NCBI RefSeq assembly: GCF_006345805.1
Contig: NC_043009.1
Span: 25,172,001-25,236,000, forward strand
Reading direction: 5' to 3'
DNA length: 64,000 nucleotides
Source of the DNA: Octopus sinensis
Taxonomy: Eukaryota
Shown: piece after piece, positions 36,799 through 63,642 of the stretch
Layout of the letters: every line of letters starts with the position of its first letter
Numbering within the stretch: the first letter of the stretch is position 1
The notes under the pieces: generated by a model
What the model was told of the DNA's origin: nothing
What the model saw: the letters and a program-made list of their open reading frames with translations, nothing else
The model's database searches: none
Made by a program: the position numbers and the translations under genes

Positions 36799-39375
36799 CA
36801 GGGAGAGAAAGAGATATATGTGAACACCAGTTGTTCCGTACTTACATTCACGTATGCGCGCGCATACACGCACACACACACGCACGCACACACATACACA
36901 CGCACTCACACACACACATACACATATACACACAAGTAAAATATCATACATTGAACGAGGAGAATGAGACAGACTGATGTACAATGTCAGAGGTCACCAC
37001 AGGAAGACAAAAGAATCAAAAAGTCACGGACTAAATGTATGCACACATATAAGAATAAACTAACAATACAAGTTATGTATAGTTAATGGTCCTCCGTCGG
37101 TTACTGCGATGAGTGTTCCAGTGATCCAATCAACGGAACAGCCTTGCTCATGAAATTAGCAAGTGGCTGAGCACTCCATAGACACGTGTGCCCTTAATGT
37201 AGTTCTCGAGGAGATTCAACGTAACACAGAATGTGACAAGACTGGCACTCATTTTTGTCAGCTGGGTTGATTGGAGCAATGGGAAATAAAGGGTCTTGCT
37301 CAAGGGTACAACGTGTCGCTGAGAATTGAACTCACAACTTTACGTTCGAGAGCCGAATACTCTAATCGCAATGCCATGCGCCTTCACTCTCTGTTGCTAG
37401 TACGTTGTAAAAAGGTAAGGAAAATATTTGAGTTGACGTTTCGGATGGATAAACCTTTATCAAAATGGTGAACGAAGCAAGAGAAAAGAAACAAGAAAAG
37501 AAATTAAAAATAATCGGATCTGATGATGATTAATCTAGCGGTTCGATCACCTGTGCCACTTGCTCATTGAATTGGCTGAGTATACTGCAGATACGCGTAT
37601 TATTGAGATTGGAATCAGCATGACAAAGCTTGACACAGTGTAGTGTAACATAGTGTGATGCAGTGTAACAATTCATTACTTTTGCAATCCATCCGAAGGG
37701 CTTCCACGCAGTTTCCGTTTACCCACTTTCATTCAGAATACTTGGATCGATCCGAGGTTAAAGTAAAAGGAGGGTAAGAGGATAGAGGAAGGAGGAGAAA
37801 GAAGGAAGGAAGAGGCAGGGAGAAGAGGCAGGAAGGAGAATGGAAGGCAGAGGAGGGAGGGAGGTGTCCTCAAATCAGAAACCCAGCCTGAATACTTGCA
37901 ACGGAGGGGATGTCGCTAAAGGCAGCAAAGGGCCAGGTGATGATGTTAAACCGGATGACAGGGTTAACGTTACCATCCGAGTGGGCCACAGCGGGATTTG
38001 AACTCGCAACACAAAGAACCGAAACAAATACCGCAAGGCATCCCCAACCAACACTCAAATGATTTCGTAAATCCACCGTCCAAGACCGATACTTTATTTA
38101 TCGACTCTAGAAAGATGAAAGTGAAGGTGCGTGGTCTAGAGGCTACGGTGTTACGAGATCACGGTTTCGATTCCTGAAATGGGCGATGCTTTGATGTTTT
38201 TTCGCAAAACACTTCATTTCATCACATTGCTCCAGTTCACCCAGCTGTGAGTAATGCTGTGATGGACTGGCGTCCCATCCAAGGAGAATGCTGTGATCTC
38301 GGTCAATTGTATTGCCATGGAAACCGGATAACTAGCCCAAGGCTGTCTACGACTCGAGACAGTTAGTGACTGGAGTTGATGATGGTGGTGGTCGTGGTTG
38401 TGAGGAGGAGGAGGAGGACGACGACGACGATGAGGAGGAGGAGGGGGAGCGGAAGGAGGAGGAGGAGGAGGGGAGCGGAAGGAGGAGGAATGACAAAACT
38501 GATCTCGATGCAATTCGAACTCAGAAAATAAGGAGCCGCAAGAAATATCCCAAGTCATTTCATCCGACATTCTAACGACTCTGCTAATTTTCTCTTTTTT
38601 AATTTTTTTTTTTAGCCCAGGTCGGTCTTGATCCAGTAAAACTGTAATCAAAGGCGTTCCAACTGCCACCAAAGGTTTGAGTATCAGAGAAACATGTCCG
38701 ATATATACTTTCTCTGCTAAAGAGAGTATATTGTTATTGCAGGTGGTTAGAGTACTGGACTCGCAATCATAATGCCGTGGTTTCATTTCCTGGGTCGGGT
38801 AGCACGTTATATGCTTGAGCAAGGTATTTCATTTCACGTTAATCCAGTCTACTCGACTGTAAAGGAATACCATCCTAGTCCGAGTGGAGCTCACTTTCCC
38901 TCCTGCTGTCGCATGTGCCACTGGGTCAATGTCGGCAGAGCTAAGAGAATGCCCATGCTTGTTAGCGACTACACGGTCAGCTGCAGCTATAAGTGAAAGC
39001 ATGGTACATGTTACCAATCGATACTTCTTTCCGACTGATGGCTATGGTCAGATTGTCGTCGGTGGGGATTTGATTACGCACATATATGCATACATACGGG
39101 GATACATCGATAAATGCATACAATTCTGCCAGGGCGGGATTAAGACCTACAGAGGTCCTAAGCACTTAGGGCCCCCATATATATGTAATTTAAAATATTT
39201 TGCGCCCTTTTCAAACCTAGCCAGGCTCATGGGCCCGGTTTCCCGGTTTCTGTGGCGTATGTGTTCCCACCGTACCCAGCTGGACGGGACGCGTTACTCA
39301 AGAAACAGGAAGAAAGAGTGAGAGAAAGTTGGGGCGAAAGAGTGCAACAGGGGTCCTCATCTTGATTGTTGTTAA

Positions 39376-39413
39376 CAACGTTTCGGCTGTTGTACCTTCT
39401 AGTCTTCATCAGG
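39376..39413 (-). ncRNA. Hammerhead motif family 1, inverted partial copy
   Basis: Reverse complement c CUGAUGA a gacuagaagguacaacagcc GAAAC GUU g; keeps the palindromic AACGUU but helix II is degraded. Confidence 0.5.
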
Positions 39414-39641
39414 CATATGGCGTAGTGATTAAAAGCGCGGGCTACTAACCCCAAGATTCCGAGTTCGATTCCAGACAGTGACCTGAGTAATAATAGTAAT
39501 AATAATAATAATAACATCGAAAAATACCATAGGAATGAGAACCTGCCCACGGGCATATGGTGTGGTAGTTAAGAGCACGGGCTATTAACCCTAAGATTCC
39601 GAGTTCGATATCAGGCGGTGACCTGAATAAAAATAATAATA

Positions 39642-39704
<63 letters not shown>

Positions 39705-39860
39705 CAACAACAACAACAACATCGAAAAATACCTTAGGAATTAGAACCCAAGTTCGAAATTTTCCCAAAACACCTGATGAAGGCTGGAGGGTACATCAGC
39801 CGAAATGTTATGTTAACAACAAAGATGAGGACAAATATCCGTCAAATGTAAATAATGTAC
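39412..39860 (+). mobile_element. Tandem tRNA-headed SINE with (AAT)n spacer and hammerhead-bearing Penelope-like tail
   Basis: Two heads (39412 and 39551); the first has A box TGGCGTAGTGA and B box GAGTTCGATTCC, the second degenerate versions. Each is followed by (AAT)n and ACATCGAAAAATACC(T/A)TAGGAA; the second continues into CTGATGA...GAAA. Confidence 0.7.
39769..39814 (+). ncRNA. Minimal type-I hammerhead ribozyme motif, family 1 (degenerate)
   Basis: aacac CUGAUGA a ggcug-(10 nt)-cagcc GAAA u GUU auguu: perfect 5-bp helix II, one helix I mismatch, C15.2 changed to U. Confidence 0.65.
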
Positions 39861-43121: not shown

Positions 43122-43772
43122 TTGTCGTCATCATTTAATGTCTGTCTTCCATGTTAGCTTGGCCTGGATGGTTTGATAGGAGCTGGCCAGGCAGAAGACT
43201 GCACCAGACTTCTGTGTCTGTTTTGGCACAGTTTTTATGACTGGATGCCCTTCCTAAAACCAGGCACCTCGCAGAGCAGACTGTCCACTCTGTAAGGTGG
43301 TAAACACATATAAACATACATTCACAGATGCATACATCTGTGTGTGTGTTAAGAAGCTTGCCTCCCAACCATGTCTGGGGTTTAGTCCCATAGTACAGCA
43401 TATTGGACAAATATCTTCTACTGTTGCCCCAAGCTGATCAAAACCTGAGTGAATTTGATAGACAGAAACTCAAAAAGGGAGCTCATTTTATATATGTATG
43501 TGAGCATTTCTGTGTGCGTGCCCTTATCTTGACATCACTTGGTACTTGTAAGTGACCATCATTGTCATACAAGTGAAATTATTCATTTACAATAAACTGT
43601 GGAAAACCTGTCAGGCCATGGGGGAATATTAGCTTGCTGGAAAACCAGTGGCTGTTGGTGACAGAAAGGGTATTTGGCCTTAGAAAACCTACCTCAGCAA
43701 ATTCCATGTGACCTGTGCAGGCATGGAAAAGTGAATGTTAAATGTTGATGATGATGATATATATATGTATAA

Positions 43773-43853
<81 letters not shown>

Positions 43854-45027
43854 ATCCATATTTTTCTATGTTTGCATGAATGAGATGTGAGTTTATTGGG
43901 GGAAGATTTTTTTCACCTGGATTGGCCCTTCTAGGCACCAATCCCCACCTGTTTCCAAGCAAAGTAACAATAATCTCCCAGTTTATCAAGTGACATCATG
44001 AACATGGATATGTGGAGAATTGGAGAGAAACAACACAACATGAATAAACCTTTTGCTCAGGCTTGCTTTCACAGTGGAGTGCAAGCAAAGGACACTGCTT
44101 GCATAAACAGTAATGCCTTTGTTTACTGTCACTGAATACACATGAGGATGAGAGGCAATACAAACACACAGAAAAATGTACTTTTCTTATATTTCCCAAA
44201 TTTCCCATAAAATTCAAATATAGATGATGCCTACCTTAGTCTTAATGCACAAATAATAGAAAGATTTGAGCACATGTATGTGTTTCCAAAGATAGGGAAG
44301 AGAGCAGTCTTATGTTGTCATAACTGCCATCATCATTTAATGTCCATTTTCTGTGCTGACATTGGTTGGATGGTTTAACAAGAGGTGGTGAGCCAGAGGA
44401 CTGCATCAAGCTCCAGTGTCTGCTTTGGCATGATTTCTACAGCTGGATGCCCTTCTTAACACCGACCACTTTACAGAGTGAACTGGGTGCTTTTTATGTG
44501 CAACAGGTACTAACAAGATCACCAAGTAACTCACAAGACAAGACTCCTCCACTGAGGTAGGAAGCAGCATTGAGGGAGATGGCTTTGTGCTTGGTGATGT
44601 GAGGTATTATGACTGAGGGGTAGAAAATTATATTTGACTCCGCACTGCTTGTACTGGGTCTTTTATTCTGTTCAAACTTACTTTTTTATTCATATAAAAT
44701 ATTATATATATGTGCATGTGTGTACATCAATTTACATAAATGATAATAAATAAACAAGGATTAACCAATTTCATCAGCCAACTTTTCATTCAAAGTCATT
44801 ATAATTTCAGTCCTTGCGAAAAGTTGGGCTTGATTGTCTGGAAAGCAGCAGGGAGGGAAAAAAAAAAGCCATATGAAGTAGATTCTTATGACTGAAAAAA
44901 CTCAGTACAGACATAAGACTGGTTTGCAAAACATGAACAAATGCATACAGAGCATGAATGAAATACACACAAAAACACACACATACATACATACATATAT
45001 AACCGTCTCTTTTTCTTTGTTTATCAG

Positions 45028-46195: not shown

Positions 46196-46824
46196 GAAAA
46201 ATATGTCTATTGACTTTGTATACATACTAGGCCACTGGTAGAAAAAATTTCTATAATTTTTCCTACCCTATATTAATTTATATATGTATGTATGAGTGTG
46301 TGTGTGTGTGTCTGGTGGCATGTAAAAAGCACCCAGCATATTCTGTTAAGTAGTTGGTGCTAGGAAGGGCACCCAGCCCCAGAAATCATGCTGCAACAGA
46401 CAATTGTAGTCTGGCCAGCTCCATGTCAAACCGTCCAATTCATGCCAGCATGGAAAGCGGACGTTAAACAACGATGAGGTGTCCATATTAAATCCCTTCC
46501 CCACAACATATCTCCCCTATACCCTCTCCGTTTACCAGGGCCATTCATCACATCCCTCACTCTAGGTCCCTCTCACTCACCCTCTCCGATCCCTGGTCCA
46601 TTTCACTATATACACCACCCCTGTAACTTGGGTGTATGGTCCCTTCCTCTCATCTCCATCACATCTTCACCACTTTTTCTTCTTCTTCTCTCTCTCTCTC
46701 TCTCTCTCTCCATTTGAGGTAACCATATTTCTCTTCTACTGCAAGACACTCAAAGTTGAGGGATCTTGTCCTGCTGTTCATTATTTACATTTGATGGATA
46801 TTTGTCCTAATCTTGTTTGTTGTT

Positions 46825-46867
46825 AACACATTTCGGCTGATATACCCTCCAGCCTTCATCAGGTGTC
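46825..46867 (-). ncRNA. Hammerhead motif family 1 (cleavage triplet deleted)
   Basis: gacac CUGAUGA a ggcug gaggguauau cagcc GAAAU guguu; the GUU triplet is missing. Confidence 0.55.
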
Positions 46868-46995
46868 TTGGGAAAATTTCGAACCTGAGTTCTCGTTCCT
46901 AAGGTATTTTTCAATGTTGTTGTTATTATTATTATTATTATTATAACATCGAAAACTACCTTAGGAATGAGAACACAGGTTTGAAATTTCCCCAA

Positions 46996-47038
46996 AACAC
47001 CTGATGAAGGCTGGAGGTTATATCGGCCGAAATGTGTT
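46996..47038 (+). ncRNA. Hammerhead motif family 1 (cleavage triplet deleted)
   Basis: aacac CUGAUGA a ggcug gagguuauau cggcc GAAAU guguu; inverted partner of the 46825 copy. Confidence 0.55.
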
Positions 47039-47594
47039 AACAACAAACAAGATGAGAACAAATATCTGTCAAATGTAAATATTATACATAATTCCTCATC
47101 TCTTAAATATAGAACTGTACTCTGCTGTTGCAGTGCTACACAAATAGCACCCGGTACACTATAAATTGGTTGGTGTTAAGAAGGGCATTCAGCTGTAGAA
47201 ACCATACTCAAACAGACAGCAGAGCTTGGCACAATTCTCTGACTTGACAGTTCCTGTCGGACCATTCTCCCCATGCCAGTGTGGAACATGGATATTAAAT
47301 GATGATGATGATGTTTTTGTGTGTCCTTGTCTTATCATGTAATAGTTCTAAATGAATGACACCATCATACAAGTGATGCTGTTCGTCTCCAATCTTCCAT
47401 GAAAGACATGTCCAACCATGGAGAAATATTACCTCCATTGAAAACAATTGCGGGTTAGCGAGCAACCAACCTGAACCGGGCAACCAAACATAGAAAAATC
47501 TGCTTCACCAAATTCCTCCTGAGCCATGCAAGCATGGAAAAGTGGACATAAAAACAAATGATGATGCATATATATATAATCAATATATACATAT

Positions 47595-52638: not shown

Positions 52639-53201
52639 TTGGGTTGTCTGGAAAGTTTGTGCAGATTTTTGAAGGAATAAAAAAGGTCAATAAATACTTG
52701 TCATTACATTTTTAATCAACCAAATATGAATCGTTTTGTTGCACAACACGTCTCCATCTTTCCTTTAACTTGAAATTACCCTCTTCGTAGAATTGAGGTG
52801 GTTTCATGACAAAGAATTCATCAAGGTATCTTTTTACATCATCCAAGGAATTGAAATTTTTACCATTAAGACTATTCTGCAGAGAACTGAATAAGTGGAA
52901 ATCCGAAGGAGCAATATCTGGTGAATATGGAGGGTGGGGTAACACATCCCAGCTGAGCTGCAGCAATTTTTGTCTGGTTCCCAAAGCATCAAGTGCTGAA
53001 AATGAACTTTCTTATCTTCCATTTTAAAGGATTACAAAACTAACACAGGTTATAGGAACATAAGCCTTCCACAAAAAGATAGCTTAAACTGTTCTCTAAA
53101 TGGAGGTGTTGTCAAATCCTATTTTATGGACTCAACCATGTTCTAAAATAAGTTGAAAGGTAAGCTACTATAAATCGGCACAAACTTTCCGGATAACCCA
53201 A
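52639..53201 (-). mobile_element. Internally deleted mariner element
   Basis: ~30-bp TIRs (TTGGGTTGTCTGGAAAGTTTGTGCAGATTT / AAATCGGCACAAACTTTCCGGATAACCCAA), TA flanks. N-terminal MEDKKVHFQHLMLWE is fused out of frame to the C-terminal WDVLPHPPYSPDIAPSDFHLF. Confidence 0.9.
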
Positions 53202-53398: not shown

Positions 53399-53961
53399 CA
53401 GTGGTTCCCAACCTTTTCACTACTAAGGACCCCTTTTATTTAAATGAGTTTTCCCACAGGCCCCTTTTAATATGCTTATCTTTATGTAGCCATAGTGGAT
53501 GAGTTTCTTTTGAGCATTGGGCCTGGACCTCACAGAGGCAAGGTGGTTGAGTTCCTTTCGAGCATTGGGCCCCATGGTGGAAAAGTGGTCAAGTTCCTTT
53601 CAAGTATTGGGCCTTACGGAGGCAATGACCAAGACCTTTGGCATCATGTCGTGCTTGAGAAGAAGACCCATCAAGCCAAGCAAAATTGCAGTTGTGGCAG
53701 ATATCGGTGTCATGCAAATGGCACCCATGCTGGTAGCATATTAAAATACCCATTACACTCTCGGAGTGGTTGGTGCTAGGAAGGGCATCCAGCCATAGAA
53801 AACCATGCCAAATCAGACTGGAGCCTGGCGCAGCCTTCCAGCATGCCAGCTCAGTCAAACCGTCCAACCCATGCCAGCATGGACAACGGATGATAAGATG
53901 ATGATGATGACATATATGAAATTTTGAATTTAGTTCATGGACCACAGGTTGGGAACCAGTG
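53399..53961. mobile_element. hAT (Charlie-like) MITE with a nested SINE
   Basis: TIR CAGTGGTTCCCAACC / GGTTGGGAACCAGTG (1 mismatch); flanks ttctagag / gtctagga share the TCTAG core typical of Charlie targets. Confidence 0.75.
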
Positions 53962-57769: not shown

Positions 57770-58251
57770 AATAGCTGTCTGGTAAGAAGCTTGCTTACCA
57801 ACCACATGGTTCTGGGTTCAGTCCAACTGTGTGGCACCTTGGGCAAGTGTCTTCTAGTATAGCCTCAGGCCAACCAAAACCTTCTGAGTAGATTTGGTCG
57901 ACAGAAACTGAAAGAAGCCCATTGTATATATATATGGATGTGTGTGTGTGTGTGGAGGCGCAATGGCCCAGTGTTTAGGGCAGCGGACTTGCGGTCATAG
58001 GATCGCAGTTTCGATTCCCAGACCGGGCGTTGTCAGTGTTTATTGAGCGAAAACACCAAAAGCTCCATGAGGCTCCGGCAGGGGATGGTGGCGAGCCCTG
58101 CTGTACTCTTTCGCCACAACTTTATCTCACTCTTTCTTCTGCTAGCCTGCTCGCTTAGCCAGCAGGGTGGTGTCATTTGAAGGCTAAAACAATGCGAAGT
58201 GCATTGTGACCAGCGATGTGTAACAACATCTGAATAGTCTGGTTGGTCACG

Positions 58252-63454: not shown

Positions 63455-63642
63455 CTGGTGGCACTTAAAAAGCACCCACTACACTCACAGAGTGGTTGGC
63501 GTTAGGATGGGCACCCAGCTGTAGAAACACTGCCAGATCAGACTGGAGCCTGGCGCAGCCACCTGGCTTCCCAGACCCCGGTTGAACTGTCTAACCCATG
63601 CTAGCATGGAAAACGGACGTTAAACGATGATGATGATGATGC
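63455..63642 (+). mobile_element. SINE 3' tail ending in (TGA)n (RTE-type tail)
   Basis: CCATGC.AGCATGGAAAACGGACGTTAAACGATGATGATG; related copies at ~43125, ~44325, ~46310, ~47140 and ~53700. Confidence 0.65.

What the first reader, a model, noticed from the sequence alone, without database searches (positions are those of the whole stretch)
39355..39860. tRNA-headed SINE fused to a hammerhead ribozyme tail (candidate Pol III-driven retrozyme)
Seen in sequence: tRNA-like head with A and B boxes, (AAT)n, then a tail containing aacac-CUGAUGA-A-ggcug/cagcc-GAAA-(C)GUU-guguu. Combining the four local copies (39376-, 39769+, 46825-, 46996+) reconstructs a complete minimal type-I hammerhead: 5-bp helix I, 5-bp helix II, an extra A after A9, and a palindromic AACGUU helix III needing dimerisation. 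The units are arranged as partial tandem plus inverted copies, a Penelope hallmark. Established: minimal hammerheads occur in Penelope elements and metazoan retrozymes, and a SINE-plus-hammerhead design is known from Schistosoma SMalpha. Inference: this is a cephalopod non-autonomous element transcribed by Pol III, self-processed in tandem arrays (possibly into circRNA) and mobilised by a PLE RT. I am not aware of a description in octopus but cannot check the literature.
Basis: partly seen in the sequence, partly recalled or inferred. Interest (0 to 1): 0.85.

Follow-up and report, generated by a model that had tools for sequence, protein, structure and literature searches.

The report
SINE with decayed hammerhead-like tail
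A short mobile element with a tRNA-like front end has, near its far end, a worn relic of a minimal hammerhead ribozyme like those of Penelope retrotransposons. No copy in this window is an intact ribozyme, and the proposed RNA-circle (retrozyme) life cycle has no support here.

Summary
The repeat is real. There are two tRNA-like heads with Pol III A and B boxes, an internal (AAT)n/(AAC)n microsatellite, and a 147-nt tail present as three full copies and two fragments.

All three full tails carry AACAC-CUGAUGA-A-GGCUG(G)…(U)CAGCC-GAAA. These are the only such motifs in the 64 kb; 0.04-0.09 are expected by chance.

The "complete hammerhead" is a chimera of copies. After GAAA the copies read UGUUAUGUU, UGUGUU (both arms at 46.8 kb) and CGUUGUU. 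No copy has GAAACGUUGUGUU, and the majority state puts G at the cleavage position. One copy (39769+) is two transitions from a perfect minimal hammerhead (chance about 0.002). Rfam finds no hammerhead and ARAGORN finds no tRNA.

At both loci a direct tail abuts an inverted tail, which resembles Penelope insertions and not LINE insertions. However, the partial tandem lacks its 3' end, the opposite of a Penelope pseudo-LTR.

No two ribozyme motifs lie in tandem on one strand, and a TTTT run sits just upstream of the motif in two of three copies. The retrozyme/circular-RNA and Pol III read-through claims are therefore unsupported.

Most likely this is an old SINE with a Penelope-derived tail, the same design as Schistosoma SMalpha. 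No further copies could be retrieved, so the consensus test remains undone.

The parts
39353..39413 (-). Inverted tail fragment covering tail positions about 60-119. It holds CUGAUGA (39412-39406), a degraded helix II, GAAA (39384-39381) and the AACGUU palindrome (39382-39377). It is cut at CUGAUGA on its 5' side and at GAUGAGGAC on its 3' side.
39412..39485 (+). tRNA-like head 1. A box at 39418-39428 and B box at 39462-39472, one mismatch each.
   Evidence: Not called as a tRNA by ARAGORN or Rfam.
39486..39551 (+). Rest of unit 1: (AAT)n, then the first 34 nt of the tail body (39510-39543), then the unique junction TGCCCACG. The unit lacks the hammerhead part, so it is truncated at the 3' end.
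39552..39625 (+). tRNA-like head 2, 84% identical to head 1, with more degraded boxes.
39626..39720 (+). Internal microsatellite: (AAT)18 at 39646-39699 and (AAC)7 at 39700-39720.
39714..39860 (+). Full 147-nt tail of unit 2. It contains TTTT at 39760-39763 just upstream of the motif.
39769..39814 (+). Hammerhead-like module. AACAC 39769-39773; CUGAUGA 39774-39780; bulged A 39781; helix II 39782-39787 paired with 39796-39801; GAAA 39802-39805; UGUU 39806-39809; AUGUU 39810-39814. Two transitions away from a perfect minimal type I motif.
46775..46929 (-). Inverted arm of the second locus: full tail plus (AAT)6(AAC)3. CUGAUGA at 46862-46856; UGUGUU follows GAAA.
46934..47088 (+). Direct arm of the second locus: full tail with almost no microsatellite. 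CUGAUGA at 47001-47007. Helix II has an A-to-G change that keeps a U.G pair. UGUGUU follows GAAA.

Best explanation
This is a family of old, non-autonomous retroposons built as: tRNA-derived head with Pol III A and B boxes, then an internal (AAT)n/(AAC)n microsatellite, then a 147-nt unique tail.

Inferred: the tail was borrowed from the 3' end of a PLE, so a PLE reverse transcriptase/GIY-YIG endonuclease recognises the RNA and integrates it in trans. The template switching typical of that enzyme would produce the inverted duplicate of the tail found next to the direct copy at both loci.

Shown here: the repeat anatomy, the conserved core and helix II, the inverted architecture, and the decay of the copies.

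Inferred only: PLE origin and mobilisation, past ribozyme activity in master copies, and Pol III transcription.

The copies in this window are dead relics, 12-15% apart from one another. None can be expected to self-cleave as it stands.
For: - Repeat anatomy and copy list.
- Both heads are followed by (AAT)n plus the same tail start, and all four tail starts share the boundary AACATCGAAAA. The microsatellite is therefore internal to the element, not a target site.
- CUGAUGA, a bulged A, a 5-6 bp helix II opening with G10.1-C11.1, and GAAA are invariant in the three full copies. The core letters are also kept in the fragment.
- These are the only such motifs in the window, against 0.04-0.09 expected by chance.
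- Copy 39769+ also satisfies the downstream rules except for two transitions, one of them at a CpG. The chance of that is about 0.0016.
- Of the three variable columns in the 36-nt core region, two lie in loop 2. The third is an A-to-G change that keeps a U.G pair in helix II.
- The bulged base, G10.1-C11.1, a palindromic 15.2-16.2, a 4-5 bp helix I and paired motifs 100-700 bp apart on opposite strands are the published traits of PLE minimal hammerheads (PMC4209133).
- An inverted 5'-truncated copy abutting the element is a published PLE insertion trait (PMC8557442). It is seen at both loci. LINE twin priming would not duplicate the same segment.
- Within each locus the two tails share variants. 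The helix II loop reads GUACA at 39.x kb and UAUAU at 46.8 kb, and both 46.8-kb arms share the 6-nt state. This fits one insertion event per locus.
- Octopus genomes are reported to hold many unclassified SINE families and active Penelope families (PMC13282606).
Against: - No copy is a complete hammerhead. The majority state GAAAUGUGUU puts G at position 17 and lacks helix III.
A 6-nt or 7-nt ancestor needs 2 substitutions and 2 indels (my count).
- Both 46.8-kb arms share the shortened state. If they came from one RNA, an element with a dead ribozyme still transposed.
- Rfam finds no hammerhead at E<=10.
- Lower variability of the core is not significant: 3 of 36 against 23 of 107 columns, p=0.086.
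- Unit 1 is truncated at the 3' end, the opposite of a PLE pseudo-LTR.
- No target-site duplication was found. The 8-nt match CTGCTGTT probably belongs to a neighbouring repeat.
- No PLE and no PLE 3' end matching the tail is in the window.
- TTTT lies upstream of the motif in two of three copies.
- Only three or four copies at two loci were available.
Confidence: 0.5

Rival explanations
1. This is an ordinary LINE-mobilised tRNA-SINE. The GGCUGG…UCAGCC hairpin is simply a stem-loop in the tail, for example one recognised by a LINE reverse transcriptase. The flanking CUGAUGA and GAAA are coincidence and were never a ribozyme.
For: No copy is complete and the majority has G17. Rfam finds nothing. 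The window is full of tRNA-SINEs and LINE remnants, including RT at 26.7-27.5 kb and a Dong/R4-like 3' part at 7.2-8.7 kb.
Against: The downstream register in 39769+ has a chance of about 0.0016 on top of the core. The bulged A and G10.1-C11.1 match the PLE type (PMC4209133). Both loci carry an inverted duplicate of the same tail segment, which LINE integration does not usually make. No LINE in the window shares the tail.
Confidence: 0.27
2. Head and tail are separate elements. The 147-nt unit would be a short PLE-derived non-autonomous element, or 5'-truncated PLE ends, that inserts into (AAT)n microsatellites. One such microsatellite happens to follow an unrelated short SINE head.
For: PLEs show an insertion bias for microsatellites (PMC8557442). 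The 46.8-kb locus has two tails and no head. Minimal hammerheads are mostly dispersed single motifs (PMC7761336). Other SINE-like families in the window end in triplet microsatellites.
Against: Both heads are followed by the same tail start, though the two heads share one locus. All four tail starts share one boundary, which random 5' truncation would not give. At 46.8 kb the microsatellite lies between the two inverted tails, on their 5' sides, and not outside them as a target would. No microsatellite follows any tail 3' end.
Confidence: 0.15
3. It is a foldback or MITE-type DNA transposon whose roughly 150-nt terminal inverted repeats are the 'tails'.
For: The 46.8-kb locus has 155-nt arms that are 86% complementary with a 4-nt spacer.
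Against: No TA, TTA or 8-bp target duplication lies at the ends. At 39.3 kb the left arm lacks its outer 28 nt and the arms enclose two tRNA-like heads in direct order. Each tail carries a microsatellite only on its inner side.
Confidence: 0.05

Closest known systems
Minimal type I hammerheads of Penelope-like elements (Cervera & de la Pena 2014, PMC4209133)
   Same: CUGAUGA…GAAA core; one unpaired base between A9 and G10.1; G10.1-C11.1; short helix I; no helix III hairpin, with an ACGU palindrome that would need a second copy; location near the element's 3' end; partner motifs a few hundred bases away on the opposite strand.
   Different: Helix II has 5-6 bp against the 7-8 bp reported for Schistosoma. 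No copy here has all parts, the majority has G17, and no PLE reading frame or pseudo-LTR is nearby.
Schistosoma SMalpha / Sjalpha SINE-like elements with a hammerhead (as described in PMC6765202)
   Same: A Pol III-type promoter and a hammerhead motif in one short non-coding repeat.
   Different: SMalpha carries a canonical hammerhead that is active in vitro and occurs in tandem repeats, as described in PMC6765202. Here the motif is minimal and decayed, separated from the head by a microsatellite and about 60 nt of body. It is not in a same-strand tandem.
Metazoan non-LTR retrozymes (PMC7229834; bioRxiv 10.64898/2026.07.22.740005)
   Same: Non-coding, AT-rich, hammerhead-bearing, and probably dependent on PLEs.
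   Different: Retrozymes are head-to-tail tandem repeats of 170-400 nt, each with a canonical type I hammerhead, and have no promoter of their own (PMC7761336). Here there is no such tandem, the motif is minimal, and a Pol III-type head is present.
Ordinary tRNA-derived SINEs of molluscs and cephalopods (for example OK, OR1 and OR2 of octopus, cited in PMC4824008 and PMC4758252)
   Same: tRNA-like head with A and B boxes, a body, a tail from a partner element, and internal microsatellites in some families (PMC4758252).
   Different: The tail carries a hammerhead-type core, and both loci show inverted tail duplication. I could not compare it with the published octopus SINE consensus sequences, which are not held in the library.

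Membership tests
Hammerhead ribozyme, minimal type I (PLE type) | Catalytic core CUGANGA … GAAA | tested here: met
   Invariant in three full copies and in the fragment.
Hammerhead ribozyme, minimal type I (PLE type) | Helix II closed by G10.1-C11.1, with one unpaired base after A9 | tested here: met
   GGCUG(G)/(U)CAGCC with a bulged A in three copies. One A-to-G change keeps a U.G pair. The helix is broken in the 39376- fragment.
Hammerhead ribozyme, minimal type I (PLE type) | A15.1, complementary 15.2-16.2, U16.1, and H (not G) at position 17 | tested here: inconclusive
   39769+ has U.G, U, U (passes if the wobble or a decayed CpG is accepted). 39376- has ACGU plus U. Both 46.8-kb copies have G17 and fail.
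Hammerhead ribozyme, minimal type I (PLE type) | Helix I of at least 4 bp in register after the cleavage site | tested here: inconclusive
   4 of 5 pairs in 39769+. GUGUU is present but 3 nt out of register at 46.8 kb. Only 2 bp are possible with the 39376- state.
Hammerhead ribozyme, minimal type I (PLE type) | Match to the curated Rfam hammerhead models | tested here: not met
   No hit at the gathering score or at E<=10. From my own knowledge, these models expect a helix III hairpin, so minimal variants may escape them.
Hammerhead ribozyme, minimal type I (PLE type) | Self-cleavage, as a dimer | not testable with these tools
   Needs in vitro transcription of consensus monomer and dimer.
tRNA-derived SINE | Internal Pol III A and B boxes at tRNA-like spacing | tested here: met
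   Head 1 has one mismatch in each box, 44 nt apart, as in the other SINE heads of the window. Head 2 is degraded.
tRNA-derived SINE | Recognisable tRNA cloverleaf or tRNA homology | tested here: not met
   ARAGORN finds none. Rfam tRNA is not reported at E<=10. No cloverleaf appears in the alignment fold.
tRNA-derived SINE | Head and tail linked in independent copies, flanked by target-site duplications | tested here: inconclusive
   Both heads are followed by the tail start, but they lie at one locus. No target-site duplication was found.
tRNA-derived SINE | No Pol III terminator (T4 or longer) inside the transcribed unit | tested here: not met
   TTTT at 39760-39763 and in 46825-; TTTC in 46996+.
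Metazoan non-LTR retrozyme | Head-to-tail tandem repeats, each with a type I hammerhead on the same strand | tested here: not met
   Only one sense motif per locus. Partners are on the opposite strand, and same-strand motifs are 7.2 kb apart.
Metazoan non-LTR retrozyme | Expression as small circular RNA | not testable with these tools
   No transcript data are available.
PLE-dependent non-autonomous element | Inverted 5'-truncated copy abutting the element | tested here: met
   39353-39413(-) abuts head 1. At 46.8 kb the 155-nt arms are 4 nt apart. The trait is described in PMC8557442.
PLE-dependent non-autonomous element | Partial tandem in which the extra copy is 5'-truncated (pseudo-LTR) | tested here: not met
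   The extra unit keeps the head and lacks the 3' 113 nt.
PLE-dependent non-autonomous element | 3' end shared with an autonomous PLE of the same genome | not testable with these tools
   No PLE is in the window, and no cephalopod sequence could be reached.

The most novel reading that the evidence does not exclude
Master copies of this family are Pol III-transcribed SINEs whose PLE-type hammerhead is active as a dimer. It would process multimeric or paired transcripts, possibly into circular RNA, before PLE-mediated integration. That would be a promoter-bearing hybrid of SINE and retrozyme in a cephalopod.
Probability: 0.08. Interest if true: 0.7.

Novelty: new member of a known kind. Interest (0 to 1): 0.4.

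Why it matters
If the genome-wide consensus confirms an intact minimal hammerhead, this would be a second, independent case after the schistosome SMalpha/Sjalpha elements of a Pol III-type SINE carrying a hammerhead tail. It would also link a cephalopod SINE family to Penelope-like elements, whereas SINE partners are usually LINEs. In that case part of the large 'unclassified SINE' fraction reported for octopus genomes (PMC13282606) might be PLE-dependent. It would also provide a natural test of whether the hammerhead matters for PLE-type mobilisation, since the 46.8-kb pair seems to have been copied from an RNA whose ribozyme was already broken. As it stands, the finding is a plausible, decayed example of the widespread 'dispersed minimal hammerheads' already described in animals.

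Tried and rejected
- **Rfam.** The whole window at gathering scores and both loci at E<=10 gave no hammerhead and no tRNA. The only hits were spurious miRNA-type matches to the long inverted repeat.
- **ARAGORN.** No tRNA found.
- **Getting more copies by DNA pattern.** Exact or gapped pattern scans were run on metagenome, viral and prokaryote-genome collections. Results were 0, 7 non-homologous loci, 0 and 0. A probe for the window's most abundant repeat also gave 0 and 0.
- **Getting more copies through proteins.** A spurious ORF through the tail gave no hit. A mariner fragment gave at best 68-70% identity, to insects. A Dong/R4-like LINE fragment gave one 2.2-kb Logan contig with no SINE.
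- **Profile search of the window.** It found no further tail copies and only weak matches to heads of other SINE families.
- **ORFs on the metagenome loci.** No PLE reverse transcriptase was seen.
- **Target-site duplications.** None is convincing. The 8-nt CTGCTGTT match is probably part of the neighbouring repeat S.
- **MFE and cofold predictions.** They did not decide between the models.
- **Alignment fold of the heads.** No cloverleaf appeared.
- **Sequence strings in the paper library.** No hit.
- **Unavailable papers.** The Lunse et al. and Ferbeyre et al. papers are not held.
- **MITE/foldback reading.** Rejected for lack of target-site duplications and because heads lie between the arms.
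Full report
**What is there**

The flagged interval is part of a composite repeat. Read on the + strand, it consists of:
- An inverted 61-nt fragment of the tail (39353-39413, minus strand).
- Head 1 (39412-39485), then (AAT)n, then the first 34 nt of the tail body (39510-39543).
- An 8-9 nt unique junction.
- Head 2 (39552-39625), 84% identical to head 1.
- (AAT)18 and (AAC)7.
- A full 147-nt tail (39714-39860).

A second locus has two full tails head-to-head. They form 155-nt arms (46775-46929 minus, 46934-47088 plus) that are 86% complementary, with only 4 nt between them and no head. A profile search finds no further copy in the 64 kb. The full tails are 85-88% identical to one another, so these are old copies.

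**The head**

Head 1 matches the Pol III A-box and B-box consensus with one mismatch each, 44 nt start to start. At least ten other SINE heads in this window have the same spacing, and the head aligns with them. Head 2 is more degraded. Neither head is called as a tRNA by ARAGORN or by Rfam at E<=10, and no cloverleaf emerges from an alignment fold. 'tRNA-like head with A and B boxes' is therefore fair, but 'tRNA' is not demonstrable.

**The hammerhead-like module**

All three full tails read AACAC-CUGAUGA-A-GGCUGG-(8 nt)-UCAGCC-GAAA. The fragment keeps CUGAUGA and GCCGAAA.

My own descriptor was CUGANGA, 0-1 bulged base, helix II of at least 4 bp, then GAAA. It hits only these three places on either strand of the window. 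In 400 dinucleotide-preserving shuffles it gives 0.09 hits per window, or 0.04 for at least 5 bp. Because the three copies are one family, the core alone is only mildly beyond chance for a reader who screens many windows.

Several features not in the descriptor agree with what Cervera and de la Pena list as emergent traits of Penelope minimal hammerheads (PMC4209133):
- an unpaired base between A9 and G10.1;
- a G10.1-C11.1 pair;
- a palindromic 15.2-16.2;
- a helix I of 4-5 bp;
- paired motifs 100-700 bp apart on opposite strands.

**The 'complete ribozyme' is a chimera**

After GAAA the copies differ in length:
- UGUUAUGUU in 39769+
- UGUGUU in both 46.8-kb arms
- CGUUGUU in 39376-

No copy reads GAAACGUUGUGUU, and none passes the descriptor once helix III, H17 and helix I are required.

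The copy that supplies ACGUU has a broken helix II. It also has no helix I 5' strand, because it is cut off at CUGAUGA.

The window's majority state, GAAAUGUGUU, puts G at position 17, which is not cleavable (established hammerhead rule). It also leaves no helix III.

A 6-nt or 7-nt ancestor needs two substitutions and two indels. The deletions would be simple slippage in GUUGUGUU, and two of the substitutions are CpG decay. The three ancestors therefore cannot be ranked with three independent observations.

That is two transitions from perfect. A random 9-mer of this composition reaches that level with p about 0.0016. Multiplied by the core expectation, this gives a few in 10,000 per window.

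Other checks did not help:
- The core region varies less than the rest of the tail (3 of 36 against 23 of 107 columns), but not significantly (p=0.086).
- Rfam reports no hammerhead at any threshold.
- MFE and cofold predictions do not decide.

I put the chance that this module descends from a real PLE-type hammerhead at about 0.7. The chance that any copy here is active is near zero.

**Architecture**

Both loci pair a direct tail with an inverted copy of the same tail segment directly abutting the element. Within each locus the two tails share variants, which fits one integration event per locus.

Craig et al. describe exactly this for PLE insertions: an inverted 5'-truncated copy adjacent to the 5' end, sometimes with a 30-40 bp piece present at one end only (PMC8557442). 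LINE twin priming inverts an upstream segment and does not duplicate the same one (my knowledge).

Unit 1 keeps the head and lacks the 3' 113 nt.

I found no target-site duplication. The only 8-nt match probably belongs to the neighbouring repeat S. The left flank of the finding is a mosaic of short fragments of two other repeat families.

All four tail starts share the boundary (AAT)n-AACATCGAAAA. At 46.8 kb the microsatellite lies between the two tails. The microsatellite is therefore part of the element, not a target. This favours 'head-microsatellite-tail is one SINE' over 'a separate tail element landed in a microsatellite'.

**Mechanism claims**

- *Retrozyme or circular RNA.* The defining feature is a same-strand tandem of hammerhead-bearing units (PMC7229834). 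It is absent here. Each local partner is antisense, so a read-through transcript would fold into a long hairpin. Same-strand motifs are 7.2 kb apart.
- *Insertion of cleaved monomers.* All tails run about 55 nt past the predicted cleavage site to a common end, so they were not inserted as ribozyme-cleaved monomers.
- *Pol III.* The boxes are there, but TTTT sits 10 nt before CUGAUGA in two of three copies. This would end many Pol III transcripts before the ribozyme.
- *Need for the ribozyme.* Both 46.8-kb arms share the shortened, G17 state. If they came from one RNA, that RNA was mobilised with a dead ribozyme. This agrees with the published doubt that the hammerhead is needed for PLE spread (PMC8557442).

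**Attempts to get more copies**

The decisive test is a genome-wide consensus. It could not be run because no cephalopod DNA is reachable with these tools.

The gapped core pattern did recover seven metagenome contigs from other hosts. In three of them the core is followed by UAUU-G…GUAACAAC. This parallels the octopus-window CGUU-GUUAACAAC, with an ACGU-to-AUAU palindrome swap. That is suggestive of a wider family, but the search pattern imposed most of the similarity.

I did not verify the organism.

**Literature**

The library holds no paper linking hammerheads, retrozymes or PLE-dependent SINEs with cephalopods. Relevant background:
- The giant squid genome paper counts 235 Hammerhead_1 hits without further analysis (PMC6962438).
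- O. vulgaris is reported to have 11.6% SINEs, mostly unclassified families, and about 30 recently active Penelope families (PMC13282606).
- SINE-plus-hammerhead designs are known from schistosomes (PMC6765202).
- Dispersed minimal hammerheads are known to be abundant in animals (PMC7761336).
- Animal retrozymes have recently been argued to be PLE derivatives (bioRxiv 10.64898/2026.07.22.740005).

**Verdict**

The Pol III-driven retrozyme cycle is not supported.
- If real, it is a new member of a known kind.
- Interest is 0.4, pending the consensus test.

Noticed in passing
window 7200-8700 (+): 3' part of a LINE with a Cys-rich motif and a C-terminal restriction-like endonuclease-type segment (…VIWDREEKLCTVVEISYPADVN…), which looks like the Dong/R4 group. 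It is interrupted by a ~95-nt repeat (7310-7404) that also occurs at 39194-39290 and 29596-29679. The only database relative was one Logan contig at 61% identity.
   Followed up: partly
window 52715-53011 (-): C-terminal fragment of a mariner transposase. The best relatives are 68-70% identical insect mariner / 'SETMAR' annotations.
   Followed up: partly
window 26683-27509 (-): Frameshifted LINE reverse-transcriptase remnant.
   Followed up: no
window 4461, 19705, 20315, 23204, 23798, 29443, 33285(-), 42715, 47600, 57964: At least ten further tRNA-type SINE heads with A and B boxes 43-44 nt apart, belonging to other families. None is followed by the hammerhead-like tail.
   Followed up: partly
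window 47131-47330 (+), 44328-44499 (-), 63467-63638 (+), 53767-53910 (+), 43125-43262 (-): A SINE-like family of ~200 nt ending in (ATG)n, 70-74% identical between copies. One copy starts about 40 nt after the right arm of the 46.8-kb locus.
   Followed up: partly
window 39194-39352: The left flank of the finding is a mosaic. A fragment of repeat Q (39194-39290) is followed by a 49-nt fragment of another SINE family (39304-39352; copies at 20447-20494 and 58096-58139). That fragment runs into the inverted tail fragment with a few bases of microhomology. This could reflect serial template switching or old nested insertions.
   Followed up: partly
L003 1098-1156, L004 30-74, L005 50-94 (metagenome contigs Ga0126336/Ga0126343): Hammerhead-type cores CCUGAUGA-A-GGCUG…CAGCC-GAAA followed by UAUU-G(CAU)GUAACAAC. 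These parallel the window's GAAA-CGUU-GUUAACAAC with an ACGU-to-AUAU palindrome swap. The host is unknown and no PLE ORF was seen.
   Followed up: partly
window 17232-17331: Run of 100 N, an assembly gap.
   Followed up: no
window 9800-13500: Several kb of triplet microsatellites (AAT, GAT, GAA, AAC and others). These produce the long low-complexity ORFs on both strands.
   Followed up: no
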